IMG/VR virus record: IMGVR_UViG_3300017917_003822
Span: 124,001 to 188,000 of that record
Direction: 5' to 3' (one strand)
Length of the DNA: 64,000 bases
The notes under the pieces: generated by a model
Database searches by the model: none
The model's input: only the letters and a program-made list of their open reading frames with translations
What the model was told of the DNA's origin: nothing
Shown: positions 4,140 to 48,907 of the stretch, in pieces
How the letters are laid out: each line of letters begins with the position of its first letter
Position numbering within the stretch: position 1 is the stretch's first letter
Program-made: the position numbers and the translations under genes

Positions 4140-4153
4140 TTTTTTTTAGTATA

Positions 4154-4182
4154 AAAAAAGCCTACCTAGAGTAGGCTTTTTT
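4154..4182 (+). terminator. Intrinsic terminator
   Basis: AAGCCTAC-CTAGA-GTAGGCTT followed by a T-tract. Confidence 0.8.
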
Positions 4183-4284
4183 GTTGACTTTTTGTCGGGT
4201 TGAATATCACCAATTATGACAATTTGTCCTAGTCTATTGTTTGGAATTGAATTTGATATATTTGAATTAAAAAAAATAAAATAT

Positions 4285-4659: not shown

Positions 4660-4663
4660 GAAA

Positions 4664-14699: not shown

Positions 14700-15320
14700 A
14701 TGGAAAATATAGTTAAAAGTTTTAGTGGATTTTTAAATGAAAGAGAATTACCAGACGAACAAGGTGACATCCTAGTTATGCTAGGAGCACCAGGTTCTGG
14801 TAAAGGTACACTTTCCAAAGAACTCCAGGATAAGTATGGAATACATCATATTTCCACCGGAGATCTCATCAGAAAATCTGATGATCCGGAGCTTAAAAAA
14901 ATCATAGACGGTGGTAATTTTTTACCCGATGATATGATGATTAAGATTTTAAGGAAAGAACTTAAAAAAGTGGATGTAACTAAAGGAATAATATTTGATG
15001 GTTTTCCAAGAACTATCAAACAAGCTAAAAGACTTGATTCCATGCTAGGTAAAATGGGTCTTGGTCTTAATCATGCAATCTTTTTGGATCTTCCTGAAGA
15101 AACTGCCAAAAATAGAATCAGAGAAAGAGCTAAGAAGGAGGACAGAAAGGATGACACCAGTGACGAGATCATCAACAAAAGGTTCGATGAATATCACGAG
15201 AAAACATTTCCTCTTTTAGATTTCTACAAGAGAAGCAGAAAACTAATAAAGATTGATGCATCTGAAGGCAAGGAGGGAGTATTAAAATCAGTTTCTAAAA
15301 AACTGGGATTGAAGAAATAG
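14700..15320 (+). CDS. adk: Adenylate kinase (short LID) with CTS-like N-terminal extension
   Basis: GAPGSGKGT, HISTGDLIR, FDGFPRTIKQA, R.DD. Confidence 0.93.
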   Translation: MENIVKSFSGFLNERELPDEQGDILVMLGAPGSGKGTLSKELQDKYGIHHISTGDLIRKSDDPELKKIIDGGNFLPDDMMIKILRKELKKVDVTKGIIFDGFPRTIKQAKRLDSMLGKMGLGLNHAIFLDLPEETAKNRIRERAKKEDRKDDTSDEIINKRFDEYHEKTFPLLDFYKRSRKLIKIDASEGKEGVLKSVSKKLGLKK

Positions 15321-19832: not shown

Positions 19833-20771
19833 TTGTACATGGAAAGAAGATATGGTTATTGTTGCATAAATCTATCACTCTCGGAGTCTAAGGAAAAAGT
19901 AACAACAAATAGAGGAATGGTCAAAAAAACATTTTTAGAAAGAGGTCTAGAATATGCCTCCGAGCTTGCTTTAAAGAATGTTATTGATCTCAGGAGAGTT
20001 TTAGAATGGAATGACGACAACAATATAAGGATGTATAGAATGTCCAGTGATATATTTCCTTGGTCTTCCGAATACGAGATAAGTGATCTCCCTGATTACG
20101 ATCAGATTTCATTAATTTTAAAATCTTGTGGAGACTTTGCAAAAAGAACAGACCAGAGAATAACATTTCATCCGTCACCTTATGGGGTTTTAGCTTCTGC
20201 TAACCCTGCCGTTGTTGAAAACGCCATTAAGGAATTGAATCAACACGGTGAGATTTTTGATATGATGGGATTAGATCAGACACATTTCTATCCAATCAAC
20301 ATTCACGTAAACACAACACAGCCATCAAAAGAGGAAGCTGCAGGCAGGTTCTGTTTAAATTTCCAAAGATTGTCTGATTCTGTTAAGAAAAGATTGGTTG
20401 TGGAGGTTGATGATAAAAAATCTCAATATACAGCTGTTGATTTGTTCCATATGATACATAAGCCACTAGGAATTCCAATTACTTTTGATTATTTACATAA
20501 CCAGTGTAATCCATCAATGTATAATGAGGAGGAAGCTTTATCTCTTTGTCTTTCAACTTGGCCAGATGGAATACCAGCAATTACTCATTATTCCGATTCC
20601 AAAAAAATATACGAAGACAACACGGCAAAGGAAGTTGCTCATACCGACTGGATATGGGGAAAGGTCGAAACTTATGGTCTGGATTTCGATATAGAATTTG
20701 AGGTAAAAATGAAAGACAAGGCTCTTTTGAAATTCCTAGAAAAAAAAGATTTTTTATATGAAAAACAGTAA
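19833..20771 (+). CDS. uvsE: UV damage endonuclease UvsE/UVDE
   Basis: GYCCIN, RMYRMSSDIFP, RITFHP, TFDYLH, H.D...EVKMKD. Confidence 0.92.
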   Translation: MYMERRYGYCCINLSLSESKEKVTTNRGMVKKTFLERGLEYASELALKNVIDLRRVLEWNDDNNIRMYRMSSDIFPWSSEYEISDLPDYDQISLILKSCGDFAKRTDQRITFHPSPYGVLASANPAVVENAIKELNQHGEIFDMMGLDQTHFYPINIHVNTTQPSKEEAAGRFCLNFQRLSDSVKKRLVVEVDDKKSQYTAVDLFHMIHKPLGIPITFDYLHNQCNPSMYNEEEALSLCLSTWPDGIPAITHYSDSKKIYEDNTAKEVAHTDWIWGKVETYGLDFDIEFEVKMKDKALLKFLEKKDFLYEKQ

Positions 20772-20982
20772 AGAAATAGAGGATTTTGAAAAATCCATTA
20801 ATGGCCCTGAAAATTCAGAGATAAAATACACAATCGATAGGTCGATAGAGGCATCTGTTAGATATGAGTACCTTATCGAGAACTATGGTAAGGAGAAGGT
20901 TGATAGCGTGGTTCCTGATTTTCTTGAATTGTACGATAGTGAAATCTTCTCGGAGATCAAGAAAAAATTAGAGTCTGAGTAA
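20758..20982 (+). CDS. Hypothetical protein
   Basis: ORF overlapping the uvsE stop. Confidence 0.55.
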   Translation: MKNSKEIEDFEKSINGPENSEIKYTIDRSIEASVRYEYLIENYGKEKVDSVVPDFLELYDSEIFSEIKKKLESE

Positions 20983-20984
20983 TA

Positions 20985-21335
20985 ATGGATAGTCTAGATG
21001 GAGGTGGATTTACATTTGGTGCTGTTGAACCACCACAACATCCACAATACAAAATACTGAGAAAGCACATAGAAAGATCGATACAGGATATTTTTCTCGG
21101 ATCGCTAAGGAATCAGGACGTTGAATTCCTATATGTTTTTGAAACGGAGGAACAAATTGACGGATTTATAAAAAGAACTCTATCATACTGGGAAAAATTC
21201 GAAAAGTATGAGATTTGTAAGGAAGTCCTGGATCTCTCTGTAACACTTAAGGAAAAATGGAAAACTCGAGACGATCTAAGGGAGAGTGAGGGTGTAATAA
21301 GAATAAAGGATATATTCGGATCAACTTTTAAATAA
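20985..21335 (+). CDS. Small protein with UVR-like E.YE.C motif
   Basis: FEKYEICKEVLDL. Confidence 0.6.
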   Translation: MDSLDGGGFTFGAVEPPQHPQYKILRKHIERSIQDIFLGSLRNQDVEFLYVFETEEQIDGFIKRTLSYWEKFEKYEICKEVLDLSVTLKEKWKTRDDLRESEGVIRIKDIFGSTFK

Positions 21336-22379
21336 ATGAAAGATTATTATAAAATATTAGGGGTTTCCAGACAAGCCACTCCAGACGAAATCAAGAAAGC
21401 ATATAGAACTTTAGCAATAAAATATCATCCGGATAAAACTGGAAATGATAAGGATGCTGAAATGAAATTCAAGGAGGTCTCTGAGGCATACGAAACTCTA
21501 TCTGACCCGGAAAAGAAATCTTCCTATGACAACCCATATTTTGGAGGTAGCAATGCATTTAATGACATGTTCAGAAATGCTTTCAATGGCAGAAATCCCT
21601 ACCAAAGTGCAGATTTTTCTTCGTTCTTTACTAGAGGAAATCCTGCTCATGAGCCAATGATAAGCAAGGGAAAAAACATTAATATTTATGTTAGCGTCAC
21701 ACTGGAGGAGATGATGAATGGAACAGTTAAGAAGGTTAAGGTCAACCGAAGAGTTCTATGTGATCCCTGCAAGGGTACAGGGGCAGAAAACGGGGAAACT
21801 GTTAACTGTTCAAGTTGTGGAGGTGTTGGTAGAATTAACAAGACGGTACACCATGCATTCGGTGAGGTTGTTATGCAAGAAACATGTAGATCCTGTAATG
21901 GGGTGGGTTCAATAGCAAAATCATACTGTAAGGAATGTTCGGGAGCAGGCACAGTCAGAAAGGAGGAGGAACTTGATATAAACATTCCGAAGGGATCTAT
22001 CAGCGGAGTTTCTTATTTGGTTGTTGGTAAGGGAGACTGGGCAAGATCTCCGTCAAATCCTGGTGATTTGATAGTTAATGTCGAGGAATATGTTCATCCA
22101 GTTTACGTTAGAGATGGGATTAATTTAATACACAATAAATACATTTCATTTAAGGAAGCATGTCTTGGTATCGATGTTGATCTCCCAAATTTAAAGGGAT
22201 CTACGCTCAGAATAAAAATACCACCTGGAACTTCTCCGGGTAAGATACTAAGATTACATGCAAAAGGTCTTCCCGAGTTCAACGGATTTGGGAATGGTGA
22301 CATTCTAGTTAAAGTTCATATATTAATACCTCAGGATCTAACTGAGGAACAAATTAAAGCATTAGATTATTTCGATTAG
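21336..22379 (+). CDS. dnaJ: Chaperone DnaJ
   Basis: J domain with HPD, four CxxCxGxG-type repeats, C-terminal GDILVKV. Confidence 0.96.
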   Translation: MKDYYKILGVSRQATPDEIKKAYRTLAIKYHPDKTGNDKDAEMKFKEVSEAYETLSDPEKKSSYDNPYFGGSNAFNDMFRNAFNGRNPYQSADFSSFFTRGNPAHEPMISKGKNINIYVSVTLEEMMNGTVKKVKVNRRVLCDPCKGTGAENGETVNCSSCGGVGRINKTVHHAFGEVVMQETCRSCNGVGSIAKSYCKECSGAGTVRKEEELDINIPKGSISGVSYLVVGKGDWARSPSNPGDLIVNVEEYVHPVYVRDGINLIHNKYISFKEACLGIDVDLPNLKGSTLRIKIPPGTSPGKILRLHAKGLPEFNGFGNGDILVKVHILIPQDLTEEQIKALDYFD

Positions 22380-22380
22380 T

Positions 22381-22743
22381 ATGGAGATGTTAATATTTTT
22401 ATTGTTTACTGGATGGAGCATAACATCCGGTATAGTGAACGGATCTCTCCTTGATCCGATAAGAAATTGGGTTTTTGTAAAAGCACCTTTTTTCAGTAAG
22501 CTTTTTACGTGCATTCGTTGTTTGGGTTTTTGGGTTGGATTTTTACTTTTTGGTAGTCTTACTTTCCTTGAGATAATTGGTCCAGTGATTCCTGGACTGG
22601 AATCAGGGTCGATCATTAACTACCTTCTTTTTCCGTTCATACAGAGCGGTAGCGGAATCCTTATTGAGTCGGTAATCATTTTCCTTATGAGAGATAGAAA
22701 GATTGAAATAAACAACTATAACACGCCAGATAAGAAAAATTAA
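22381..22743 (+). CDS. Membrane protein (DUF1360-like)
   Basis: Hydrophobic helices with a TCIRCLGFWVG CxxC motif. Confidence 0.55.
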   Translation: MEMLIFLLFTGWSITSGIVNGSLLDPIRNWVFVKAPFFSKLFTCIRCLGFWVGFLLFGSLTFLEIIGPVIPGLESGSIINYLLFPFIQSGSGILIESVIIFLMRDRKIEINNYNTPDKKN

Positions 22744-22745
22744 GT

Positions 22746-24155
22746 ATGAACAAATATTTGAATATAACCGACCAGATAAACACACAGTATAGAACGTATG
22801 CACTCTATGTTCTTCAAAGTAGAGGAATTCCTAATTTTTATGATGCACTAACTCCAGTTCAGAGGTTAATTTTAGAAAACTCACCTAGTAAGTTTAATAA
22901 GACAATTGGATTAGTTGGTGAGGTCATTAAAACTGGTCTTTATCACCACGGGGATTCTTCTTTAGCTGGTGCAATCTCTAAGCTAGCAAGACCTTTTGGG
23001 TGTTCCTATGGTATTCTTGAGGGTGACGGATTTTTCGGATCCCCAGTAAATCCAAGTCCTTCCGCTCCGAGATACACCTCAGTTAAAATAAACCAGAAAG
23101 TCAAGGATATTATTTCGAAGAATTATGATCTGAATGAAAAAAACAGTGAGGGTGGTCATGACTGGATTCATGTCGAAGTTCCGCTTGGTCTTTTGACACA
23201 CGTTGTTGGTATTGCTGTTGGGTATAGAAGTAATATACTTCCCAGAAAATTTGAGGATATAGTTGAATACCTTCAGGGCTCACCAAAATTACTTAAACCA
23301 TATTTCAAGGACTTCTCTGGTAAAATAACCAAGTACATGAATGAGGAAAATACATGGTTAATAGAGAGTGGAATTGAAATAGATCAGAATAAAAAGACGA
23401 TAAGAATTTTCGATCTCCCTCCAGTAATGAGATATGATAGCTTCATAAACAAACTGGAGGAGAAACTAGAAAGAACCGGACATGATTATCGTATAGAAAA
23501 TAGATCACAGAGCAAATGTGAATTGATAGTTTCTTTAAGAGGAATAGGTAACTCAGATGCTTTCAAAGATGTTTGTGACGTTGTTTCTAAACTTACCAAG
23601 ATAATTGTAAAGGAGGATATTATTTTTATCAAGGATGGTAACGTGATGGAATTCAGTTCAGTTAAGGAGTATTTGGATCATTTCAGGGGACATTTAGAAT
23701 TTGTCAGGTTAAAAAGATTAATGAGAGACGAGGCTAACCATTCCAGAGAACTTGCTTTTCTGGAGGCTAAACTCAAATTTCTTAATTTCATGGTTGCCAA
23801 AAAAAGAACCAATGATGAGATCTTCAAATTTTTAGGAGATTTTGAGGGTTGGATTTCTGCTAGACTACAGAGAATAGAAGCTGTGAAACTAAGTGCTGAA
23901 CATATTAAACAAACTGAAATAGACATACAGGAGCTTAAAAAGAAAATAGCACAAACTAAGAAGGATATTAAAGAACAGGATAAGGTATACAAATCCCGAA
24001 TGAAGGATATCCAAAAAATGGCCAAAGGTAAAAACACCAGATTCACAAACACAGCACTATTCGAACCTACCCATTCTGACGGTATAGAAATATTCCAGAT
24101 AGTTGAAGAGGAAGAGGAAAATAACGCGGAAGAAATTGAAGAAGATGAAATATAA
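22746..24155 (+). CDS. Type IIA topoisomerase breakage-reunion subunit (T4 gp52/GyrA-like)
   Basis: RGIPNFYDALTPVQR, YHHGDSS, catalytic APRYT. Confidence 0.93.
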   Translation: MNKYLNITDQINTQYRTYALYVLQSRGIPNFYDALTPVQRLILENSPSKFNKTIGLVGEVIKTGLYHHGDSSLAGAISKLARPFGCSYGILEGDGFFGSPVNPSPSAPRYTSVKINQKVKDIISKNYDLNEKNSEGGHDWIHVEVPLGLLTHVVGIAVGYRSNILPRKFEDIVEYLQGSPKLLKPYFKDFSGKITKYMNEENTWLIESGIEIDQNKKTIRIFDLPPVMRYDSFINKLEEKLERTGHDYRIENRSQSKCELIVSLRGIGNSDAFKDVCDVVSKLTKIIVKEDIIFIKDGNVMEFSSVKEYLDHFRGHLEFVRLKRLMRDEANHSRELAFLEAKLKFLNFMVAKKRTNDEIFKFLGDFEGWISARLQRIEAVKLSAEHIKQTEIDIQELKKKIAQTKKDIKEQDKVYKSRMKDIQKMAKGKNTRFTNTALFEPTHSDGIEIFQIVEEEEENNAEEIEEDEI

Positions 24156-24192
24156 AAATAAAAACGACTAGAATATTTAAATAACAAAAATC

Positions 24193-24963
24193 ATGAAATT
24201 AAGAATTACAAGTATCCCAAATCTAATCTCCTTTCTAAAAAGAATGAAAACTGTTGACCGCAGTGTTATTTTAGAATTAAATGGCGATAAATTATTTTCA
24301 AAGGTTCACACTGCAGATAAATCAGTAATGAAATATTCGAGTGTAGTCTTCAGCGATGTTTTGGAAGGTGAGATTGACTGGAAAGCCGTAAATGCGGACA
24401 GAATTAAAATCGGTATCATTGACATTACAAGACTAATAGAGGCCTTCAAGCACTTCAGACCAGAGGAGGAGGTTCACATTGAGCTTTCCCTAGCAACATC
24501 TGGTGATTCTTGTGTTGCTAATGAGATTAAACTGGTTTCATCTTCACTTAACATTAAATTAAGATGTGCCGATTTAACTTTATTGTCATACGTCGAGGAT
24601 AGTATACTAAATCTTGTACATTCCAAGGAGGAATGGGAGGCTAATTTTAGAATTTATCAATCTGATTTCAGTACAATAATTTCTTTATGTGGTCTAGAAA
24701 CCAATTCGGAGGAGATATTATGTTTTGAGGTGAAGGAAAAGAACGTCCATGCTATTGGTGAATCTTTTAATTATAAATTGAACATAGGATCTTCGGAAAT
24801 TATTTTTGAAAATCCCGAAACAACATCCTCTCCAAATATTTACAAAAATCAACTTTCTTACATGGAGCAGGAAACATGTCAAGTTTATGTGCATGAAAAT
24901 AGATTGGTTCTTGTTTCAGAACAATCATCAACATCAATTGCTATCGGATTAGTAGAAAAATAA
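24193..24963 (+). CDS. Putative sliding clamp (gp45/PCNA-like)
   Basis: 256 aa, alternating beta/alpha pattern, directly upstream of the PolB C-terminal subunit; no diagnostic motif. Confidence 0.55.
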   Translation: MKLRITSIPNLISFLKRMKTVDRSVILELNGDKLFSKVHTADKSVMKYSSVVFSDVLEGEIDWKAVNADRIKIGIIDITRLIEAFKHFRPEEEVHIELSLATSGDSCVANEIKLVSSSLNIKLRCADLTLLSYVEDSILNLVHSKEEWEANFRIYQSDFSTIISLCGLETNSEEILCFEVKEKNVHAIGESFNYKLNIGSSEIIFENPETTSSPNIYKNQLSYMEQETCQVYVHENRLVLVSEQSSTSIAIGLVEK

Positions 24964-24969
24964 TAGACA

Positions 24970-26118
24970 ATGACTGCAGAGGAAAGAATAGAAATACAGG
25001 AAAAGATCGAAAGCCTGACTTCTCTTAAGAATGAGTTGAAAAACGAGGAACAGGCAATTAAATTGACAATGAACTCCATCTATGGTGCGATTGGTAACAA
25101 CTGGTTTGTTTGTTTCAACCCGGATGTAGCTGAAGCCGTTACTTTGCAGGGTCAGGATCTAATTAAATACTCGGAAAAAATTCTACATAAATATTTTCAC
25201 GAACATTGGCATCTTGACACGGAGCTCCATGAAAAGTTAGGAGTTACTGAGGTAAAGAAAGTAACCAAGCCTCTTGTTATTTATGGAGACACTGATTCTA
25301 ATTATGTTACATTCCAGGAGGTTGTCGATTCGTGTAACTATCAGGGAGATGCGAAGGATTTGATTTTAAAGATTAATGAATATAGACTTAATGAGTATTT
25401 AAGAAAATGCTTCGACATCTACTCTAAAAAATGGAACACTGACAACTATCAGGACTTTGAGCTTGAGACTCTTTCTTTTAATGCTATCTTTTTAGGTAAG
25501 AAAAAATACGTTGCTAACTTAGCTTATGACTCTGGTATTCACACTGATCCTCTTTCACAACTTAAATTTACTGGAGTTGAGATGATAAAGGGTGGGACCC
25601 CACCTTTTGTTAGAGAGAAATTGGTTTATTTAACAAGATTCATATTCTCCCGAGGTAGAAATTTTGACATAAGGGAGTTTGTTAGGGAACTTAAGAATAT
25701 CAAGAAGGAATTCAAAGTACAGGAGCCAAAGAATATATCTGCTTCGGTTAACATTAACAACTACGAAAAGTTTATATTAAATGATACCACTGCTTTTGAG
25801 GTTGCAAAAGCATGTCCGATTCACGTCAGAGCTTCCGGCTATCATAATTTCCTTCTAAATAATTCTAAATACAAGAGCAAATACTCTCTTATCAGAAGCT
25901 CAGAGAAGGTTAATTATTATTTCGTTAAAACAAAATCTGTGGCAGACAATAATGTTTTCGCATACCCTCAGGGAACATTTCCGTACGAGTTTGCCCCACC
26001 AATAGACTATGACGAGCAGTTTACCAAGACTATTCTCGATCCGATTAATAGATTTATTGAAGTAATGGGGTATAATAAGATAAGTCCAAATCTTTTCATG
26101 ATAAACGCTTTATTTTAA
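24970..26118 (+). CDS. Family B DNA polymerase, C-terminal subunit (motifs B and C, thumb)
   Basis: KLTMNSIYG, YGDTDS, KKKY, FTGVE. Confidence 0.93.
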   Translation: MTAEERIEIQEKIESLTSLKNELKNEEQAIKLTMNSIYGAIGNNWFVCFNPDVAEAVTLQGQDLIKYSEKILHKYFHEHWHLDTELHEKLGVTEVKKVTKPLVIYGDTDSNYVTFQEVVDSCNYQGDAKDLILKINEYRLNEYLRKCFDIYSKKWNTDNYQDFELETLSFNAIFLGKKKYVANLAYDSGIHTDPLSQLKFTGVEMIKGGTPPFVREKLVYLTRFIFSRGRNFDIREFVRELKNIKKEFKVQEPKNISASVNINNYEKFILNDTTAFEVAKACPIHVRASGYHNFLLNNSKYKSKYSLIRSSEKVNYYFVKTKSVADNNVFAYPQGTFPYEFAPPIDYDEQFTKTILDPINRFIEVMGYNKISPNLFMINALF

Positions 26119-26119
26119 T

Positions 26120-26335
26120 ATGGGATTTAATGTAAGATATCTGCCAGAACTCGAGGTTCTCCTGGAAAGAAGAAAAAAATACGAAACTGATGAGGATTTT
26201 TTATGGGCAGTTGTCGGTAAATCTGATTCGATAGCTGGACCCAATAAATCTGTGGAATATCTTGATTCAATCTACGAGAAAATAAAAAACAAGGAGAAAA
26301 AAGAAGAAATTGAAAAAAGTGGAGAAGACGAATAA
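26120..26335 (+). CDS. Hypothetical protein
   Basis: ORF in operon. Confidence 0.55.
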   Translation: MGFNVRYLPELEVLLERRKKYETDEDFLWAVVGKSDSIAGPNKSVEYLDSIYEKIKNKEKKEEIEKSGEDE

Positions 26336-26606
26336 AAACCGCAACTCTGAATCTTTCGACATATTAAGGGATTCCGAGGACTTCTCGGAATACCGACTCC
26401 TCATGATAGAGGAGGCTGATTTTATCTTATCCAATAAGAAAGAATATATTCAGCAGAGTTTTTTACCTGACGAGATTAAAATAATTAGAATCTGTGCCCT
26501 GATTGATTTCTTTATCTTGGAGGATGAGGATTCCATAGTTGATGATTTATTAAAGCTCGAGGAGGTTATAAGACTAAAAAAATTTATAAATTTAGGGTAC
26601 CTTTAA
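26310..26606 (+). CDS. Hypothetical protein
   Basis: ORF in operon. Confidence 0.5.
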   Translation: MKKVEKTNKNRNSESFDILRDSEDFSEYRLLMIEEADFILSNKKEYIQQSFLPDEIKIIRICALIDFFILEDEDSIVDDLLKLEEVIRLKKFINLGYL

Positions 26607-26675
26607 ATCACGCAGGAAGGTAAAACATTCTTCTGGTCTTGGATATATAGACTACTAAAATAATAAGAATAATTA

Positions 26676-28133
26676 ATGTCAGGTAGAAAAATACTTAACT
26701 TTTTCTCTTTTCTAAACGAAGCTAAAAGTGAAACCACAAAGGTTATTGTTCTAACAGGTAATGTTAAGGGTAGTAAAACCTCAAGTTCATTTATGGAGGA
26801 GTGCAAGAAAAGAGGGATTGAATGCCACGTTGTTGATGTAAACGATGCAACATTGGAAAAAGTTTATAATGGGCACCTATTAAAAACTGAGGAGGAACAA
26901 ATATTAATAGAACCAAACTCAACGGTTATAGTTCCTAGAAGAGGAGTATTAGAAAACTCCCACACAAAGCAAATACTCCTTTCTTTGGAGGAAGCTAGAT
27001 ATTTCACAGTAAACACTCTGGAATCTATGGAGATGTGTGAAAATAAGTTCATTACATCTCAAATAATGGAAGAACATAATTTACCCGTACCTAGATATTC
27101 CTTAGTACCAAATGAGGATTTCTTGGATAAGGCTCTTGAAGCTGTTGGAGGTAAATTCCCTGTTGTGATGAAGTTACTTTCGGGAACCCAAGGTATCGGT
27201 GTTTCTATTGTTGATTCCTATGCATCACTGAAATCTGTTTATCAAACAATCAGAAAACTTGATGACACCAATGAGATATTGATACAGGAAAAAATAGATT
27301 CCAAATCTGATCTTAGAATACAGGTTATTGTTAAGAAATTCGACCCATTAAATGCAGGTAAAGATAACTGTATAATTCTCGGATCTATGAAAAGAGAGGC
27401 GGTGGAGAAAGATTTTAGGACTAATTATTCATTAGGTGGTAAAGTTTCTAAATTTGACATTCCGGAGGAATTGGTTGATATAGCTTGCAAAGCAGCAAAT
27501 GCAGTTGGATGTCATTGGTGTGGTGTTGATATTATGATAGATGAAAAAACACAAAAACCCTATATATTGGAGGTCAATTCTTCACCAGGGACCGAGGGTA
27601 TATCCAAAGCTATAGGTAAACCTATTGTTGATGATGTTCTTGATTACATTCTGGATAAAGAAAATTGGGCATTTTCAACACTTGAAGTTGGATATTTAGA
27701 AAATGTCAATATACCAGGAATTGGTTATATGGTAGCTAAATTTGATACTGGGAATGGATCTAAATCTTGCACACTCCATGCTGATGAGGTTGAGGAGAAG
27801 GATGACAAACTTATTTGGAAAGTTGGTGACAAAAAATTCGTAAATGATATCGTTGGATATTCTGATGCTGAAATCGGTAAGGATATTCACACTAGACCTA
27901 TGATAGAGATGGACGTTGTTATCAACGGAGTTACTATACCAAAGGTAAAAATTTCGCCGACCGACAGAACTGATAAAAGTACACCATTCTTAGCAAATAG
28001 AGCTTTTATGAGAAAGGCTGGTTTAATAGTTAATCCACACAAGGCATTTGTTATTAGTGATGAGCCAGAAACTAAATACGAAGTTGGTAAAGCTAAAGGA
28101 GAACCTCATGCAGGAATAGAATTTGAAAAATAA
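26676..28133 (+). CDS. RimK-family ATP-grasp ligase fused to a C-terminal RimK-associated aspartic protease domain; CTS-like N-terminus
   Basis: NKF.T, FPVVMKLLSGTQGIGV, FRTNYSLGG, GVDIM, LEVNSSPG; then AKFDTGNGSKS...R..M...L.NRAF. Confidence 0.9.
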   Translation: MSGRKILNFFSFLNEAKSETTKVIVLTGNVKGSKTSSSFMEECKKRGIECHVVDVNDATLEKVYNGHLLKTEEEQILIEPNSTVIVPRRGVLENSHTKQILLSLEEARYFTVNTLESMEMCENKFITSQIMEEHNLPVPRYSLVPNEDFLDKALEAVGGKFPVVMKLLSGTQGIGVSIVDSYASLKSVYQTIRKLDDTNEILIQEKIDSKSDLRIQVIVKKFDPLNAGKDNCIILGSMKREAVEKDFRTNYSLGGKVSKFDIPEELVDIACKAANAVGCHWCGVDIMIDEKTQKPYILEVNSSPGTEGISKAIGKPIVDDVLDYILDKENWAFSTLEVGYLENVNIPGIGYMVAKFDTGNGSKSCTLHADEVEEKDDKLIWKVGDKKFVNDIVGYSDAEIGKDIHTRPMIEMDVVINGVTIPKVKISPTDRTDKSTPFLANRAFMRKAGLIVNPHKAFVISDEPETKYEVGKAKGEPHAGIEFEK

Positions 28134-28142
28134 TAAAAAAAC

Positions 28143-28355
28143 ATGGAAAATTTAAAACCGTTCAAACAAGTAAATGAATCTGAGCAGTCAGAAAAGACTG
28201 AAAAAATACAGGTGCTTCTATCTAAGGAAGATTTAACTGACTTAGGTAGAAAAATTTCTAAGGAAGCTCTTGCTAAGGGAGAAGCACCAGTTTCAGTTTC
28301 TCATTATGTGAGAAAGCTTATCAGAAAAAATCTTGGTAAAACTACTACAGATTAA
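28143..28355 (+). CDS. Small protein, possible ribbon-helix-helix, CTS-like N-terminus
   Basis: MENLKPFKQVNES; IQVLLSKEDL...SVSHYVRKLIR. Confidence 0.55.
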   Translation: MENLKPFKQVNESEQSEKTEKIQVLLSKEDLTDLGRKISKEALAKGEAPVSVSHYVRKLIRKNLGKTTTD

Positions 28356-28678
28356 TTCGAAGAAAGAAATTCAGAATAACTAAGTACCCTGCGGATTCCC
28401 TCCGGCGGGGTATTTTTTTGTTCCTCGTCTGAGTCGACATCTTCCGTTTGGTCTTCAACCTCACCCTGATTTGTTTCTTCCTGGTCCGCATCATCGATGT
28501 CTGATTGTGATTCTTCTTCCGTCGATGTTTCCTCTGTGTCTACATCAACACCAGCTTCAAAATCTGTTGTTTCTTGATCAGTTTCGTCTTGGTTATTCCA
28601 TGTACCTTCACCTTCACTTCTTTCTAATTCAGAATTTAATGAATTCTGAGGAGTTTCTAATTCGTCGTTTTCGAACAT
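28352..28678 (-). CDS. Highly acidic protein (possible scaffold/internal protein)
   Basis: D/E-rich; GATATATA on the minus strand at 28714-28707. Confidence 0.65.
   Translation of the reverse strand: MFENDELETPQNSLNSELERSEGEGTWNNQDETDQETTDFEAGVDVDTEETSTEEESQSDIDDADQEETNQGEVEDQTEDVDSDEEQKNTPPEGIRRVLSYSEFLSSN
28385..28419. terminator. Hairpin terminator at the convergent gene junction
   Basis: TACCCTGCGGA...TCCGGCGGGGTA plus a T-tract. Confidence 0.6.
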
Positions 28679-28716
28679 AATATTAATATTTAAAAAGTTT
28701 ATGAAATATATATCAC

Positions 28717-29037
28717 ATGAGAAAAATATTAGAATTCGATGATTATCTGGAGGATGATCTCGATCTTAATGACTTTGAAAAATCCCAAATAAGAACCTGG
28801 ATAGGAAAATATGAGAGGTATTTCAATTTTCATGACAGCGGAAATTTCATAGATTCAATAGATCAAATAACAAAAGATGCTGTCCAGCAGCTTGGTATAG
28901 ACAAAAGTAAAACTGATGCCGTCCAGGATTATCTGGAGAGTTTATATGATCTTTCGGATGGGCTTTCCGTTATTATGGCACCCGGACCAGAAATAATTCA
29001 AACTGGAATCGATCAGGTTCAAAGATTCCAATATTAA
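28717..29037 (+). CDS. Hypothetical protein with CTS-like N-terminus (MRKILEFDDYLE)
   Basis: ORF; AATATATA at 28705. Confidence 0.7.
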   Translation: MRKILEFDDYLEDDLDLNDFEKSQIRTWIGKYERYFNFHDSGNFIDSIDQITKDAVQQLGIDKSKTDAVQDYLESLYDLSDGLSVIMAPGPEIIQTGIDQVQRFQY

Positions 29038-29038
29038 A

Positions 29039-29068
29039 TTGAAACTTTTTTTTAAGCTCGTCTATAAA
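29039..29068 (+). promoter_or_regulatory. TTGAAACT-N16/17-TAT(A/G)A(A/T) promoter class; also at 48862 and 55230
   Basis: Three intergenic copies with an 18-19 nt spacer between hexamers. Confidence 0.6.
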
Positions 29069-29089
29069 TCATAAATAATCGAGATATTT

Positions 29090-30514
29090 ATGGACTTACT
29101 TTCAGCTTTACAACAAGAGAATACCGTAACCGAGAATGGTATGGTGACTAACTCTAGCTCTCTGAAAAATACACTAGATCTTTTCTTTAGAATAGGTGCT
29201 TTGAGAGCAGCGGACCAACAGGATATAGTAAGACAATTTACTCTAGCTTTTGATGAGTCTCCTCAGGATGCTCTTAGAATCTTATTCTGGGCAAGAGATG
29301 TGAGAGGTGGTGCTGGTGAAAGAAGAGTTTTTAGAATCTGTATGTCTCACTTGGCTGAGAGCAATCCACAATCTCTGATTAAAAATTTACACCTAATCCC
29401 AGAATACGGTAGATGGGACGATCTGCTTGTTTTCGCAGGGACTAAGGTTGAGGATGATGCTTTCGACATAATTAAGACCGCATTATATAGTGCTGATAGA
29501 CTTTGTGCCAAATGGATGCCAAGAAAAGGAACCGTTTCCAATGCACTCAGAAAGTATTTGGGGCTAACTCCGAAGGAATATAGAAAACTTCTTGTCGAAA
29601 CCACTGATGTTGTTGAGCAAAAAATGTGTTCCAATAAATTCAACGAAATCGATTATTCAAAAGTTCCTTCACTTGCTGCCGCTAGATACCAGGCCGCATT
29701 TATTAAGAAGGATTCTGATAGATACACCGAATACTTATTAGAGCTGCGAAAACCAGAAGGTGAAAAAACAGCTAAGATTAATGCTTCCGCGGTCTACCCA
29801 TATGATGTTGTCAAATCTCTAAACAGAGGAGTTTGGGAGGTTGCAAATGAACAATGGAATGCACTGCCTAATTATATGGAAGGATCTAGTGAGATGGTAC
29901 TTCCGGTTGTTGATGTCTCTGGTTCAATGACGTCTCCCGTAAGTAGAGGAGGTACACTTAGCTGTATGGACGTTGCTGTTTCATTGGGTCTTTATATTTC
30001 GGAAAGAAATGATGGTCCTTTTAAAGATCATTTCATTACCTTCTCTGAAACTCCAGAATTACAAAAACTTGGTGGTAATTTAAAGGAAAGGTATTTACAA
30101 CTGCGATCATCTGAATGGGGAATGAGTACTAATTTGATCTCCGTATTTGATCTTATTTTGAATCAAGCAACCAAACATAATGTTCCACAGAACAACATGC
30201 CAACCAAAATTCTAATTCTTTCTGACATGGAATTCAACGAGGCGATAGAAGACGGTGAAAGTGTTTCGGCTATAAAAGCAATCAGATCTAAATATGATGC
30301 TGCTGGATATAAAACACCTGACGTAATATTCTGGAATATACAAAGCAGAAGAGGAAATAATATACCGGTCAGATTCGATGAGAGAGGAACTGCTTTAATC
30401 TCAGGATTCTCACCTTCCATTATGAAGTCACTACTTAATGGAAAATCGATTAGTCCTATGGATATCATGTACGAAACTATAAATTCACCTAGATATGAAA
30501 GTATTAAGGCCTGA
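29090..30514 (+). CDS. TROVE/Ro60-like vWA protein (DUF2828 family)
   Basis: FWARDVRGGAGERR, EYGRWDDL, AKWMPR, MIDAS VVDVSGSM, ILILSDMEF, ISGFSPS. Confidence 0.88.
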   Translation: MDLLSALQQENTVTENGMVTNSSSLKNTLDLFFRIGALRAADQQDIVRQFTLAFDESPQDALRILFWARDVRGGAGERRVFRICMSHLAESNPQSLIKNLHLIPEYGRWDDLLVFAGTKVEDDAFDIIKTALYSADRLCAKWMPRKGTVSNALRKYLGLTPKEYRKLLVETTDVVEQKMCSNKFNEIDYSKVPSLAAARYQAAFIKKDSDRYTEYLLELRKPEGEKTAKINASAVYPYDVVKSLNRGVWEVANEQWNALPNYMEGSSEMVLPVVDVSGSMTSPVSRGGTLSCMDVAVSLGLYISERNDGPFKDHFITFSETPELQKLGGNLKERYLQLRSSEWGMSTNLISVFDLILNQATKHNVPQNNMPTKILILSDMEFNEAIEDGESVSAIKAIRSKYDAAGYKTPDVIFWNIQSRRGNNIPVRFDERGTALISGFSPSIMKSLLNGKSISPMDIMYETINSPRYESIKA

Positions 30515-30758
30515 AGCTAGTGAATGTATAAGAGGCGAATCTCTTATTGATGCACTCCTAGATGATGCTGTCATCCAGGCATATAATATAACCGATGATG
30601 AGTATAATAAAATCTGTAGGGAAGCATCGACTGAGGAACTAGATGATTTTTTAGATCCAGTATTTTCATCATCAGGGGTTACATTTTCATCAAGGAAAAA
30701 AGGATTAAAAATAAGAAATAAATATATCGATTATTATCGAAACATTTTTTCAAATTAG
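30495..30758 (+). CDS. Hypothetical protein
   Basis: ORF overlapping the previous stop. Confidence 0.55.
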   Translation: MKVLRPEASECIRGESLIDALLDDAVIQAYNITDDEYNKICREASTEELDDFLDPVFSSSGVTFSSRKKGLKIRNKYIDYYRNIFSN

Positions 30759-30780
30759 GTATATAATATTATATAAATAA

Positions 30781-30932
30781 AGAATCGTTTCAGCAAAGAT
30801 TACAACTATATGACAGCGAATCAGACTTCAATGCCTGATTTAAAAAAAACCGATTCTGAAAAAATACAAGGGATTGTTACAGCACAATACACAACTATTA
30901 TATTTAAGCAATAATTTAGAAAACCAATCCCG
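30781..30932 (+). ncRNA. Two tandem stem-closed small RNAs (candidate Y-RNA-like)
   Basis: AGAATCG/CGATTCT and GGGATTG/CAATCCC stems; shared TT(T/A)CAGCA-N6-ACAACTAT. Confidence 0.6.
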
Positions 30933-30939
30933 CTAATTT

Positions 30940-30970
30940 AAACCCGGTTCCAACAGGACCGGGTTTTTAT
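30940..30970 (+). terminator. Intrinsic terminator
   Basis: AAACCCGGT...ACCGGGTTTTT. Confidence 0.8.
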
Positions 30971-31049
30971 TTGATCGTAAAAATCATAAATATTTTTTTT
31001 AATCCGAGGTACTTTCTTATATTTGTGAAACAAAAAATAAAATATAATT

Positions 31050-31379
31050 ATGGAAAAACCAAAAATTAATTTTAAGGAACTTGCTGAATCTTTTAAGAAA
31101 TTTTTCAGTAATTTAGGTAAGGTAGTTGTTATTTTAACTTCTATCGCATCGGGCTACGCAGCTGCAGAAATCTATCACAGATATGAAATGTCAATATCTG
31201 TTCAGAAAATGCAGACTCCTAGAGAGGGTGAGGAAATATCAGCTTTTGCAAATAACGAGGTGTTAATTATCATGGATAGTAAATCTGGGAGATATACATC
31301 CTATACAAAGGATGCAGCTATCGAGATCTCCAATGTTGTTATCAAGAACCACATTTTAAATAACAAGAGCAATAAGTAA
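31050..31379 (+). CDS. Hypothetical membrane protein
   Basis: Hydrophobic VVVILTSIASGYAAA; TATATTTG promoter at 31018. Confidence 0.65.
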   Translation: MEKPKINFKELAESFKKFFSNLGKVVVILTSIASGYAAAEIYHRYEMSISVQKMQTPREGEEISAFANNEVLIIMDSKSGRYTSYTKDAAIEISNVVIKNHILNNKSNK

Positions 31380-31900
31380 TGTTTAGAGCCATATTTACAC
31401 TTCTTGGTGCATTTATGTTGGCCACACTTACTTTCTTTTATTTTGAAACCAGTGAGTTAGTAATTATGGAGGAAACTAGGGTAAATGGTGAACCGATAGA
31501 TTCCAGTTCACCACCTAGTCTCCAGATGTACCATTACATTGAGAAGTATGCCAATGAGTATGATATCCCAAGGGATTATGCTTACGGTATAGCCTGGAAG
31601 GAAACACGATATCGTGGTCCATTTCAGTGGGAATATAACCACGCTCAAACAAGCTATGCTGGAGCGGTGGGACCTATGCAAATTATGCCATCTACTGCAA
31701 ATATGATGTGGAGAGGTAAAAAAATTTCTAGATCGGAGCTTAAAAATAACATAGAATTAAATGTTAAAACTAGTATGAAGCTTCTACGTCATTTAAAAAA
31801 CAGATACGGGAACTGGAAAATAGTTTTCGGTGCTTATAATACTGGACGTCCGATGGTCAACCAGTATGCGATAGATGTTTATAATTTTAAAGCAAATTAG
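31379..31900 (+). CDS. Lytic transglycosylase (SLT) with N-terminal TM anchor
   Basis: AWKETRY (catalytic E), GPMQIMPSTA, GAYNTG. Confidence 0.9.
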   Translation: MFRAIFTLLGAFMLATLTFFYFETSELVIMEETRVNGEPIDSSSPPSLQMYHYIEKYANEYDIPRDYAYGIAWKETRYRGPFQWEYNHAQTSYAGAVGPMQIMPSTANMMWRGKKISRSELKNNIELNVKTSMKLLRHLKNRYGNWKIVFGAYNTGRPMVNQYAIDVYNFKAN

Positions 31901-31906
31901 AACCAA

Positions 31907-31987
31907 ATGGTTAAACTTTTTCTAATATTATGTGTGGTGGTCATATTTTTATGGCTAGTGAGTCCCGACGAAAAAAAGAATCCCTGA
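31907..31987 (+). CDS. Small membrane peptide MVKLFLILCVVVIFLWLVSPDEKKNP (absent from ORF track)
   Basis: Translated by hand; single TM helix with charged tail, directly after SLT. Confidence 0.4.
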   Translation: MVKLFLILCVVVIFLWLVSPDEKKNP

Positions 31988-32072
31988 TGGATTCTTTTTG
32001 TTTTTAGTGATATAATTAATTTGGGAGTTATTTTTTATTTCAATCCCCTCTTATAAATTCTTAAAAATATTA

Positions 32073-47669: not shown

Positions 47670-47702
47670 AACTAAATATATAGAGGAAAATATAACTATT
47701 AA

Positions 47703-48296
47703 ATGAAAAGAATTTTATTTATTTTTCTACTTCTTCCTCTGATATCCTTCTCCCAGATTTTAAGGGATTCGGTTAGAGTAAAAAACGAGATCTATGAGGT
47801 GATTTACAGTGAAAAATTGGAACAACCCAGATGGATCAGATACGCCGTTCAATGTCCAAACGGAACAGCTTCTAGATCTGGAATGGACTTCTATACCAAT
47901 GACACGATAAAAACTTCTAGTCACGAAGATTATGTAAAAAATGTTTATGATAAGGGGCATTTAGCACCAGCCGCTGATTTTAATTGTACCAGAGAGCTAC
48001 TATACAAGACTTTTAGCTATTTAAACTGCGCTTTACAGAATCAGTATCTCAACAGAGGAGTTTGGAGAATGTTGGAGGAGTATGAAAGAGAATTAGCTAA
48101 GAAGGAACCAGTTATAGTGGAGATAGAGGTAGTTTTCGACTCAAATTCATTAAAACTGCCTACCGGGGCAACAGTTCCTAATGGATTCTATAAAACAATT
48201 ATTCTGGAGAGGTCCAAAAAAACCATTAAATATTATTTTCCAAACGAAGCTCCAAAGAAGGCCAGGTTCTTTGACTATGAAATATCGAAGAAATAA
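47703..48296 (+). CDS. Secreted DNA/RNA non-specific endonuclease (NucA/EndA type)
   Basis: Signal peptide ...ISFS-Q; YDKGHLAPAAD, LNRGVWRMLE, VPNGFYK. Confidence 0.9.
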   Translation: MKRILFIFLLLPLISFSQILRDSVRVKNEIYEVIYSEKLEQPRWIRYAVQCPNGTASRSGMDFYTNDTIKTSSHEDYVKNVYDKGHLAPAADFNCTRELLYKTFSYLNCALQNQYLNRGVWRMLEEYERELAKKEPVIVEIEVVFDSNSLKLPTGATVPNGFYKTIILERSKKTIKYYFPNEAPKKARFFDYEISKK

Positions 48297-48343
48297 GAAA
48301 CTTAACCAAAAAAAGATATATAATAAAAATAAAAAATATAAAC

Positions 48344-48805: not shown

Positions 48806-48832
48806 TTAAAAACCACAAATATCAATATATCA

Positions 48833-48860
48833 CAGGGGGCAGATTAATCTGCCCTTTTTT
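48833..48860 (+). terminator. Intrinsic terminator
   Basis: GGGCAGA-TTAA-TCTGCCC followed by a T-tract. Confidence 0.8.
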
Positions 48861-48907
48861 ATTGAAACTAATTTAAAACCATTCCATATGATATTAAAAA
48901 TCACATT

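What the first reader, a model, noticed from the sequence alone, without database searches (positions are those of the whole stretch)
26676..28133. RimK ligase-aspartic protease fusion carrying the virion tag
Seen: a complete ATP-grasp domain plus a C-terminal DTG protease domain, a GATATATA promoter and an FLNE leader. Known: RimK polyglutamylates ribosomal protein S6, and the associated protease gene normally lies separately, upstream. Inference: an injected writer/eraser of peptide tails on ribosomes or phage proteins. Glu-rich C-termini in this window (48344, gp52, DnaK) are candidate substrates.
Basis: partly seen in the sequence, partly recalled or inferred. Interest (0 to 1): 0.65.

Follow-up and report, generated by a model that had tools for sequence, protein, structure and literature searches.

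The report
Phage-packaged RimK–RimB glutamate-tail enzyme
A 270-kb aquatic phage encodes one protein that joins a RimK-type glutamate ligase to a RimB-type aspartic protease, in the reverse order of the known bacterial hybrid, with a T4-style head-targeting leader and a late promoter, so it is probably carried in the virion; its target is unknown.

Summary
ORF 26676..28133 (+, 485 aa) has three pieces:
- a 15-residue leader ending FLNE;
- a complete RimK-family ATP-grasp ligase (TIGR00768, 154.6 bits against a cut-off of 143.4);
- a C-terminal retropepsin-like domain of the RimB/DUF785 family (profile E 2.8e-7 to PDB 9g59; Foldseek 1e-6 to 2pma), with D357-T358-G359 invariant.

GATATATA lies 26 nt upstream of the ATG. 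It is the most enriched octamer upstream of ORFs in the 270,629-bp phage genome and precedes the portal, tail sheath and prohead protease genes.

The leader has the spacing of the T4 capsid-targeting sequence (aromatic-x-x-aromatic-[LI]-x-E). About 30 ORFs carry it, and the phage encodes a gp21-like protease. The YerA41 orthologue was found in purified virions.

The family is large: 511 viral loci and more than 2,700 proteins, always in the order ligase then protease. All ten Bacteroidota hybrids I examined have the opposite order.

Packaging, cleavage, enzymatic activity and substrate are inferred, not shown. Ribosomal protein S6 as the target is not supported. Verdict: a new variant of a known kind.

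The parts
26642..26649 (+). GATATATA promoter element of the late/structural class, 26 nt upstream of the ATG
   Evidence: 11 copies against 4.3 expected in the window. (top enriched upstream octamer genome-wide, 37 genes against 1.7 expected). (precedes tail sheath, portal, head maturation protease). (conserved in position upstream of orthologues, with no conserved -35 element).
26676..28133 (+). Whole ORF, 485 aa plus stop: leader, RimK ligase, RimB protease
   Evidence: Full-length AlphaFold model pLDDT 84.
26676..26720 (+). N-terminal leader, residues 1-15 (MSGRKILNFFSFLNE). Putative capsid-targeting propeptide with a predicted prohead-protease site after E15 (FLNE|A).
   Evidence: Conserved as [VIA]L[ND]F.SF[LI]NE[AS]. 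Synonymous codon variation, and A or S follows the Glu in 53 of 54 loci. pLDDT below 50 for residues 1-18. Same spacing as the T4 CTS targeting residues 4 and 7 and processing residues 8 and 10, and matches the gp21 motif L/I-x-E (PMC9026906).
26733..27020 (+). Pre-ATP-grasp N-domain, residues about 20-115
   Evidence: Weak Pfam Rimk_N hit (E 0.056). TIGR00768 alignment covers residues 35-325. Alternating strand/helix region in the AlphaFold model.
27039..27650 (+). RimK-like ATP-grasp catalytic domain, residues 122-325. Includes K166, Q204-E205, R248/N250, D285, E299-x-N301 and S303-P304-G305.
   Evidence: PF08443 E 8.2e-34. Alignments to 7qyr and 5zct. These residues are invariant in A3.
27672..28058 (+). 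RimB/DUF785-type retropepsin-like aspartic protease domain, residues 333-461
   Evidence: Profile hits to 9g59, 9g58 and 2pma. Foldseek. Modelled homodimer ipSAE 0.51 against a best control of 0.00, with the interface on the DTG loop.
27744..27752 (+). Catalytic D357-T358-G359
   Evidence: Read directly in the sequence. Invariant in A1, A2 and A3. Aligned to the DTG of 9g59 and 2pma.
28059..28130 (+). Conserved C-terminal tail, residues 462-485 (..Y..AKG.P..GI.F..), role unknown
   Evidence: Y468, G475 and G480 are nearly invariant. Lower confidence in the models.
28143..28355 (+). 70-aa ORF 9 nt downstream on the same strand, probably co-transcribed. Conserved neighbour with a leader-like N-terminus (MENLKPFKQVNE).
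   Evidence: Present directly downstream in 45 related loci at 55-84% identity. No Pfam family. No terminator or GATATATA lies between the two genes.
14700..15320 (+). Adenylate kinase carrying the same FLNE leader (MENIVKSFSGFLNE). Possible co-packaged enzyme.
   Evidence: leader. (Pfam ADK E 3.6e-39).

Best explanation
The gene encodes a bifunctional RimK-RimB enzyme.

- The N-terminal ATP-grasp domain would add alpha-linked glutamates to a carboxyl terminus, or make free poly-alpha-glutamate.
- The C-terminal retropepsin-like domain, acting as a homodimer, would cut such glutamate runs and/or stimulate the ligase, as bacterial RimB does.
- The gene is transcribed from the phage's late-type single-element promoter GATATATA.
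- Its product carries a 15-residue T4-like capsid-targeting leader. This would bring it into the prohead core, where the phage's gp21-like protease removes the leader after FLNE.
- The mature enzyme then travels in the head and is ejected into the next host, where it rewrites acidic C-terminal tails of one or more targets still unknown.

Shown here: the domain identities, the intact catalytic motifs, the conservation of order, leader and promoter, the presence of the gp21-like protease, and the class of genes sharing the promoter and the leader.

From the literature: the YerA41 orthologue is found in particles; the activities of RimK and RimB; the T4 CTS and the gp21 motif.

Inferred: cleavage, packaging, ejection, activity and target.
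For: Domains.

Catalytic residues invariant across 47 sequences at 39-90% identity.

Retropepsin-type dimer: ipSAE 0.51 against a best control of 0.00. That mark was reached by 20 of 30 proteins solved as pairs and 1 of 23 solved as single chains. The three runs agree in 100% of contacts, with partner pLDDT 88 or more. The closest contacts are T26-T26 and D25-D25 of the DTG loop.

Leader:
- [FYW][LIV]NE is 7-fold enriched in the first 20 residues.
- 45 ORFs have aromatic-xx-aromatic at positions 4-14, against 15 expected; 16 of these have GATATATA upstream, against 39 of all 362 ORFs.
- Carriers include the gp23-like capsid protein next to the protease gene, two SLT transglycosylases and adenylate kinase.
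- Selection acts at the peptide level.
- The leader is disordered in the model.

Protease: PF03420 30.5 bits (cut-off 27), and PHROG head maturation protease 4.3e-37.

Promoter class.

YerA41 gp066 (g112, 473 aa, 34% identical over 93% of the query) is marked as particle-associated by LC-MS/MS.

T4 CTS and the L/I-x-E motif: PMC9026906 and PMC5694885.

RimB cuts poly-Glu and stimulates RimK: PMC11957791.

The family is fixed in architecture across 511 viral loci.
Against: - No direct evidence exists for this phage on cleavage, packaging or activity.
- The YerA41 virion proteome listed 63 proteins, including RNR, polymerases and helicases, so detection there is not very specific. The YerA41 gene was classed as 'middle', not late.
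- The YerA41 leader is only loosely similar.
- A subfamily at about 42% identity has a different N-terminus, F.F[KQ]G.
- The D. psychrophila RimBK hybrid showed no glutamylation of the S6 protein tested, that of P. fluorescens SBW25, so ligase activity of fused forms is not a given.
- Pfam's own threshold for PF05618 is not reached by the single sequence.
- The metatranscriptome evidence is only a few short contigs, which could be DNA carry-over.
Confidence: 0.5

Rival explanations
1. It is an ordinary cytoplasmic host-takeover or auxiliary enzyme that acts only inside the infected cell, like the RimK-only genes of cyanophages, and is not packaged. The N-terminal leader would serve another purpose, such as assembly into a complex or stability.
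For: RimK-only homologues without a protease domain occur in cyanophages and Methylophilales phages, annotated as S6 modification enzymes. The gene sits among replication genes: topoisomerase, clamp-like and polymerase. The YerA41 orthologue is 'middle' class, and the YerA41 particle proteome also contains many replication enzymes.
Against: The leader is shared with the capsid protein, SLT enzymes and a cluster of small proteins next to the prohead protease. It co-occurs with the promoter used by the portal, sheath and protease genes. The leader is the best-conserved part of the N-terminus, under peptide-level selection.
Confidence: 0.25
2. The ATP-grasp domain is not a protein-tail glutamylase. 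Instead it is a RimK-family ligase for a small molecule or a carrier protein (MptN/CofF/LysX-like), for instance in a phage-specific metabolite or DNA-modification pathway. The RimB domain would act only as an activator or scaffold.
For: Only the family-level model TIGR00768 is passed. The S6-ligase equivalog is far below its cut-off (87.8 against 331), and MptN scores higher (135 bits) though also below its cut-off of 350. YerA41 has hypermodified thymidine and a LysW-like ORF about 4 kb downstream. S6 of MAGs holding relatives lacks a terminal Glu.
Against: The DTG motif and the partner residues R431, K434, T436, L439 and R442 are invariant, which argues for a working protease and hence a peptide substrate. 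The family also occurs in Pelagibacter phage Mosig, where no such pathway is annotated in the 10.7-kb region around the gene. No carrier-protein gene is conserved beside the gene.
Confidence: 0.12
3. The protease domain is the main actor: a second maturation or self-processing protease of the head, in the manner of retroviral proteases, which cuts phage or host proteins at acidic stretches. The ligase domain would be regulatory.
For: Retropepsin fold with a modelled catalytic dimer. Some relatives (L087-L090) have lost the ATP-grasp motifs but keep the DTG domain. RimB cleaves internal poly-Glu.
Against: In the main clade, all ATP-binding and Mg-binding residues of the ligase are invariant. 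Phage proteins in the genome contain almost no runs of five or more Glu.
Confidence: 0.08

Closest known systems
Bacterial RimBK hybrid (Desulfotalea psychrophila DP2392; Little et al. 2025, PMC11957791)
   Same: One polypeptide holds a RimB-type DTG retropepsin domain and a RimK ATP-grasp domain. The hybrid is common in aquatic bacteria, including Flavobacteriales.
   Different: Domain order is reversed. All 10 hybrids found in 201 Bacteroidota genomes have DTG at about residue 28 and ExN at about residue 422. The phage proteins have ExN at about 300 and DTG at about 357. The phage form adds an N-terminal leader and a conserved C-terminal tail. Its RimB domain is separated from the sampled stand-alone bacterial RimB-like proteins by a branch with 100/99 support.
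Classic rimB-rimK operon with RimK as S6 glutamate ligase (E. coli, Pseudomonas; PDB 4iwx, 5zct, 7qyr)
   Same: ATP-grasp fold and catalytic residues; family model TIGR00768 passed. The protease partner belongs to the same family (PF05618 / DUF785; PDB 2pma, 9g58, 9g59).
   Different: There the two are separate genes, with the protease upstream (L128, L129, L133). The S6-ligase equivalog is not reached here. The phage gene has a different setting: a late promoter and a leader.
T4 internal proteins and Alt with a capsid-targeting sequence
   Same: A short N-terminal propeptide with two aromatic residues three apart, followed by [LI]-x-E. A gp21-family protease and a gp23-family capsid protein are present. 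In T4 the cargo includes enzymes ejected into the host.
   Different: The leader is 15 rather than 10 residues, with its own consensus (F..F[LI]NE[AS]). The cargo here is a ligase-protease. Cleavage and packaging have not been shown for this phage.
Yersinia phage YerA41 gp066 (g112) and Pelagibacter phage Mosig_00005
   Same: Same architecture and length (473 and 461 aa), at 34% and 31% identity. The YerA41 protein was found in purified particles.
   Different: They are annotated only as 'structural protein' / 'putative ribosomal protein modification protein' and as 'putative glutathione synthetase'. The protease domain is not noted in either annotation. The leaders differ in sequence.

Membership tests
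RimK family alpha-L-glutamate ligases (TIGR00768 / PF08443) | Score above the curated family cut-off | tested here: met
   TIGR00768 154.6 bits against a cut-off of 143.4; PF08443 117.3 bits against 21.
RimK family alpha-L-glutamate ligases (TIGR00768 / PF08443) | ATP-grasp catalytic residues: ATP-binding Lys, hinge QE, Arg/Asn of the phosphate site, and Mg-binding D...E-x-N | tested here: met
   K166, Q204/E205, R248/N250, D285 and E299-V-N301 align with 7qyr and 5zct. They are invariant or nearly invariant (E205) in 47 sequences.
30S ribosomal protein S6--L-glutamate ligase (equivalog NF007764) | Score above the equivalog cut-off, implying the same substrate | tested here: not met
   87.8 bits against a cut-off of 331.
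30S ribosomal protein S6--L-glutamate ligase (equivalog NF007764) | Host S6 ends in Glu, so that it can be extended | tested here: inconclusive
   S6 of the five MAGs that hold relatives ends in ..EEEEKEG..KKEEA..SAKS or ..SGKS; none ends in Glu. Host assignment rests on binning only.
RimB / Zn_protease PF05618 (DUF785) retropepsin-like peptidases | Pfam gathering score | tested here: not met
   The single sequence scores 13.5 bits against a cut-off of 27, E 0.069.
RimB / Zn_protease PF05618 (DUF785) retropepsin-like peptidases | Profile-level homology and shared fold with solved members | tested here: met
   Profile A2 against 9g59 2.8e-7, 9g58 3e-5 and 2pma 8.8e-5, over the whole domain. Foldseek gives 2pma 1e-6 with TM 0.60/0.70.
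RimB / Zn_protease PF05618 (DUF785) retropepsin-like peptidases | Catalytic D-T/S-G in the hydrophobic-hydrophobic-D-T-G context | tested here: met
   K355-F-D357-T-G359 is invariant and aligns with the DTG of 9g59 and 2pma.
RimB / Zn_protease PF05618 (DUF785) retropepsin-like peptidases | Homodimer that brings the two Asp residues together | tested here: met
   This is a model only. ipSAE 0.51 against a best control of 0.00; the mark was reached by 20 of 30 solved pairs and 1 of 23 single chains. Runs agree in 100% of contacts, pLDDT 88 or more. The DTG loops touch.
RimB / Zn_protease PF05618 (DUF785) retropepsin-like peptidases | Cleavage of poly-alpha-glutamate tails | not testable with these tools
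   Needs an enzyme assay.
RimBK hybrid (Little et al. 2025) | RimB domain N-terminal to RimK | tested here: not met
   Here the ligase motif ExN is at residue 299 and DTG at 357. The bacterial hybrids have DTG at about 28 and ExN at about 422.
T4-type capsid-targeted head proteins | N-terminal propeptide with targeting aromatics and an L/I-x-E site, in a phage that has a gp21-family protease | tested here: met
   F9..F12-L13-N-E15, and PF03420 at G000 46011-47960. The motif and its spacing are from PMC9026906.
T4-type capsid-targeted head proteins | Propeptide is cleaved and the mature protein is present in virions | not testable with these tools
   The only evidence is the particle proteome of the YerA41 orthologue.

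The most novel reading that the evidence does not exclude
The enzyme works on the phage's own head contents rather than on the host ribosome. It would be co-targeted to the prohead with an adenylate kinase that bears the same FLNE leader, as a local ATP supply, and with leader-bearing acidic-tail proteins such as ORF 48344. There it would build and trim poly-alpha-glutamate tails or free poly-glutamate. That would create a tunable polyanion inside the capsid or in the ejected protein bolus, a kind of virion chemistry not described before.
Probability: 0.1. Interest if true: 0.85.

Novelty: new variant of a known kind. Interest (0 to 1): 0.6.

Why it matters
RimK/RimB is one of the few known systems that write and erase peptide tails on bacterial proteins, and it changes translation output. 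This family would place both activities in one protein that phages appear to carry in the virion.

The family is very large. It includes 511 loci in IMG/VR and more than 2,700 proteins. It is found in phages of Enterobacteria and SAR11, and relatives lie in Bacteroidota and gut Firmicutes MAG contigs. It occurs on contigs up to 434 kb. Near-identical DNA turns up in pond, lake, marine, wastewater, salt-marsh and soil metagenomes.

If the protein is ejected, it would be a new class of early host-takeover effector, comparable in logic to T4 Alt.

The leader also gives a simple sequence rule for predicting the packaged proteome of this uncultured jumbo-phage clade. It could serve as a ready-made tag for loading cargo into such capsids.

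Tried and rejected
- YerA41 gp065, the 'structural protein' just upstream of the orthologue, is not a homologue of the leader-bearing adenylate kinase (BLASTP E 3.7). The idea of a conserved ADK/RimK-RimB gene pair was dropped.
- megablast of window 20000-32000 against isolate phage genomes found nothing.
- The sigma-70 promoter and intrinsic terminator scans around the gene were at chance level.
- Pfam gave no family for the neighbouring small ORFs 26120, 26403, 28143, 28717, 28352(-) and 48344. My reading of ORF 28143 as ribbon-helix-helix-like is unsupported.
- S6 as substrate: the equivalog model failed, and the S6 tails in MAGs holding relatives do not end in Glu. The idea is kept only as a minority possibility.
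- DnaK's acidic C-terminus as a special substrate: it looks like the usual DnaK tail (my own knowledge).
- Self-glutamylation of the protein's own C-terminus: the last residues are not conserved and do not end in Glu.
- Metatranscriptome runs gave only three short contigs of 99% or more identity inside the ORF. This does not prove transcription.
- The large representative-protein search was not run. The word search, profile-to-PDB search and fold search settled the domain question, and its 150-row output would have been filled by the phage family itself.
- Only table 11 was used.
Full report
**1. The observation**

The window is positions 124001-188000 of a 270,629-bp viral record that CheckV rates 99% complete. 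It is a jumbo phage with 36% G+C.

**2. The ligase domain**

- Pfam RimK (PF08443) matches residues 122-325 at E 8.2e-34.
- NCBIfam TIGR00768 (RimK family alpha-L-glutamate ligase) scores 154.6 bits, above its cut-off of 143.4.
- The substrate-specific equivalogs are far below their cut-offs: S6 ligase NF007764 87.8 against 331, MptN 135 against 350, LysX 92.7 against 276.
- The domain aligns over residues 38-325 with the solved Pseudomonas RimK 7qyr (E 2.7e-24), and with E. coli RimK 5zct and 4iwx.
- In an alignment of 47 family members at 39-90% identity, the ATP-grasp residues are invariant: K124, K166, Q204, R214, R240, R248, N250, D285, E299, N301, S303-P304-G305.

So family membership is established, but the substrate is not.

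**3. The protease domain**

- As a single sequence, the C-terminal 150 residues only graze Pfam Zn_protease PF05618 (E 0.069).
- A profile of 50 homologues (A2) matches three solved members of that family over the full domain. These are RloA2 9g59 (2.8e-7), RloA 9g58 (3e-5) and Legionella DUF785 2pma (8.8e-5). The query's FDTGN motif aligns with their DTGA.
- An AlphaFold model (pLDDT 82.5) has these same three as its best Foldseek matches (E about 1e-6, TM 0.6-0.7), followed by dozens of HIV-1 protease chains.
- K355, D357, T358, G359 and N360 are invariant, as are R431, K434, T436, L439 and R442 of the second conserved block. That block reads DR..KSTPFLANR here and DRS.MK.P.LLGR in bacteria.
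- A two-copy model gives ipSAE 0.51 against a best control of 0.00. That mark was reached by 20 of 30 proteins solved as pairs and 1 of 23 solved as single chains. The three runs agree in 100% of contacts, with partner pLDDT 88 or more. The tightest contacts are between the two DTG loops (T26-T26 at 2.0 A expected error, D25-D25 at 3.6 A), which is the retropepsin arrangement. This is a model and may reflect memory of solved retropepsin dimers.

**4. What is known about such pairs**

RimB of Pseudomonas is a retropepsin-like endopeptidase. It removes poly-Glu tails from S6, needs about 5-6 contiguous Glu, cuts internal poly-Glu, and stimulates poly-alpha-glutamate synthesis by RimK. A natural hybrid, RimBK, has RimB at the N-terminus of RimK (PMC11957791).

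I checked this on genomes:
- In 201 Bacteroidota genomes, 60 carry PF05618.
- Of the 30 best matches fetched as loci, 10 are hybrids of 455-460 aa, all with DTG near residue 28 and the ligase ExN motif near residue 422.
- The remaining matches are about 150-aa stand-alone genes.
- In three loci the stand-alone gene lies directly upstream of rimK.

The phage family is the mirror image. In every one of about 70 viral loci with an intact ORF, ExN is near residue 300 and DTG about 58 residues later. In a maximum-likelihood tree, the 57 phage RimB domains sit on one side of a long branch (support 100/99) from 12 stand-alone bacterial RimB-like proteins. Those 12 come from a single order, so the bacterial sample is narrow.

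The fusion itself is therefore not new. Its order and its lineage are.

**5. The leader**

Residues 1-15 (MSGRKILNFFSFLNE) form a low-confidence N-terminal extension before the first strand of the fold (pLDDT below 50 for residues 1-18).

Conservation across the family:
- It is conserved as [VIA]L[ND]F.SF[LI]NE, followed by A or S in 53 of 54 loci.
- Synonymous codons vary freely (Leu uses six codons), so selection acts on the peptide.

Distribution within the genome:
- [FYW][LIV]NE is 7-fold enriched in the first 20 residues of ORFs.
- 45 of 362 ORFs have an aromatic-x-x-aromatic pair at positions 4-14, against 15 expected.
- Carriers include the gp23-like major capsid protein (G000 47991-49709, PF07068 140.8 bits), which lies beside the protease gene.
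- Other carriers are a run of ORFs just after the capsid gene, a cluster of small ORFs at the genome end, two SLT lytic transglycosylases, and an adenylate kinase in the window at 14700-15320.

The phage encodes a T4 gp21-family prohead protease at G000 46011-47960 (PF03420 30.5 bits, above the cut-off; PHROG head maturation protease 4.3e-37).

In T4, gp21 cuts after Glu in L/I-x-E. [quoted passage not shown] The spacing here is the same: F9, F12, L13, E15. I therefore read the leader as a capsid-targeting propeptide cut after E15. This is inference.

**6. The promoter**

- GATATATA at 26642-26649 lies 26 nt before the ATG.
- It is the most enriched octamer in the 60 nt upstream of ORFs genome-wide: 37 genes against 1.7 expected. 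Counting ORF starts within 80 nt, 40 ORFs have it upstream, out of 48 copies genome-wide.
- It precedes the genes for tail sheath, portal, head maturation protease, a head-closure-like protein and a tail-fibre-like protein.
- 16 of the 45 leader-type ORFs have it, against 39 of all 362.
- It is kept 16-32 nt upstream of the orthologue in about 50 related loci, including a 42%-identity subfamily, and no second conserved box accompanies it.

This resembles the single-element late promoters of T4-like phages. That comparison rests on my own knowledge of T4. The sigma-70 scan is at chance level.

**7. Relatives and evidence for packaging**

- The word-index search found 2,787 proteins, nearly all 485-510 aa, on contigs up to 394 kb.
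- IMG/VR holds 511 loci.
- Ten MAG contigs hold relatives. They are labelled Saprospirales, Flavobacteriales, Bacteroidetes, Paludibacteraceae and gut Firmicutes. These are probably co-binned phage contigs, and they hint at hosts.
- Among isolates, Yersinia phage YerA41 gp066 is 34% identical over 93% of the query, and Pelagibacter phage Mosig_00005 is 31% identical. Both have the same architecture.
- In the YerA41 study this protein (g112, 473 aa, 'putative ribosomal protein modification protein') is marked as found in purified particles by LC-MS/MS and is classed as middle (PMC7354516). That proteome lists 63 proteins, including many replication enzymes, so it is supportive rather than decisive.
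- Near-identical DNA occurs in metagenomes of at least 14 studies. Two metatranscriptome runs hold short contigs of 99% or more identity inside the ORF, which does not prove transcription.

**8. Gene neighbourhood**

Within the clade the gene order is fixed: topoisomerase subunit, clamp-like ORF, polymerase fragment, two small ORFs, rimK-rimB, a 70-aa ORF 9 nt downstream, then a 106-aa ORF. The 70-aa ORF is sometimes better conserved than rimK-rimB itself (81% against 51% in L047). In L047, L082 and L083 the enzyme lies on a long branch, which suggests fast evolution or allele exchange.

**9. Substrates**

The longest Glu run is five, in ORF 22746, a topoisomerase subunit. ORF 48344 has runs of four. 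That is marginal for a RimB-like specificity.

S6 is not supported. The equivalog fails, and S6 in the five MAGs that hold relatives does not end in Glu. Host assignment is weak, however, and the host group of YerA41 is one where RimK acts on S6.

The target remains open.

**10. Verdict**

This is a new variant of a known kind: a RimK-then-RimB fusion with a capsid-targeting leader. It is widespread in uncultured large phages and has not been described as such in the papers I could search.

Confidence by claim:
| Claim | Confidence |
|---|---|
| Domain identities | about 0.95 |
| Both domains catalytically active | about 0.75 |
| Packaged in the virion | about 0.6 |
| S6 is the target | about 0.2 |

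No genetic code other than table 11 was used.

Noticed in passing
window 14700-15320 (+): An adenylate kinase (Pfam ADK E 3.6e-39) starts with MENIVKSFSGFLNE, the same FLNE leader as the RimK-RimB protein. It may therefore be co-packaged with an ATP-consuming enzyme.
   Followed up: partly
window 48344-48805 (+): A 153-aa protein with a leader-like N-terminus (MENKIASFEEF), GATATATA 21 nt upstream, and a hyper-acidic tail ending ...EEEESDEEEEDDDEEEETEEEESEEEEG. No Pfam family.
   Followed up: partly
window 28143-28355 (+): A 70-aa ORF 9 nt after the RimK-RimB stop, present in 45 related loci at up to 84% identity. It is sometimes more conserved than the enzyme itself. The N-terminus MENLKPFKQVNE is leader-like. 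Function unknown.
   Followed up: partly
L047, L082, L083 (match at 4001-5458 or 4001-5470): The RimK-RimB gene is only 49-53% identical to the window's, while the flanking genes are 41-87% identical, mostly 65% or more. These three sit on a long branch (0.75) in the RimB tree. This could be accelerated evolution or allele replacement.
   Followed up: no
L087-L090 (ORFs of 393-403 aa, e.g. L087 2263-3444): High-GC contigs in Bacteroidota MAGs encode a relative whose ATP-grasp motifs are gone (no ExN, no SPG). The KFDTGNGA protease domain and the C-terminal tail are intact.
   Followed up: no
L069-L081 (viral loci, about 42% identity): This subfamily has a different N-terminal motif (F.F[KQ]G) in place of F..F[LI]NE, yet L069 and L077-L081 keep GATATATA 10-17 nt upstream. 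It may reflect a different protease specificity.
   Followed up: no
window 54333-55229 (+): A second, short gp23-like ORF (298 aa; PF07068 31.6 bits) lies far from the main capsid gene at G000 47991-49709.
   Followed up: no
window 4664-6553 and 21336-22379 (+): The phage encodes its own DnaK-like (629 aa) and DnaJ-like (347 aa) chaperones, judged from their N-terminal sequences only. The DnaK tail ...[10 protein letters not shown] resembles the ordinary DnaK C-terminus.
   Followed up: no
window 24970-26118 (+): This 382-aa ORF contains the YGDTDS motif of family B DNA polymerases but starts mid-enzyme. The rest of the polymerase must be encoded elsewhere, as in phage Mosig, where the polymerase is annotated in separate genes.
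   Followed up: no
window 52474-53115 and 53099-54319 (+): Two adjacent ORFs begin with nearly the same thymidylate-synthase-like N-terminus (MEDLDKKYQSLLQDVLNNGV and MNNLDKQYQALLQDILDNGV). The first is short. This may be relevant to base modification, as in YerA41.
   Followed up: no
window 26616-26675 and other upstream regions (alignment A4): The 5' leaders between GATATATA and the ATG are A-rich and lack a Shine-Dalgarno-like purine box. This fits a Bacteroidota-type host, in line with the MAG labels of the contigs holding relatives.
   Followed up: no
L001 626-973 and 5977-7398 (YerA41 gp059 and gp066): Two particle-associated YerA41 proteins share an N-terminal 'LN.KFE' stretch (ELNAKFEGE and LLNKFEAAD). 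This may be that phage's version of the leader.
   Followed up: no
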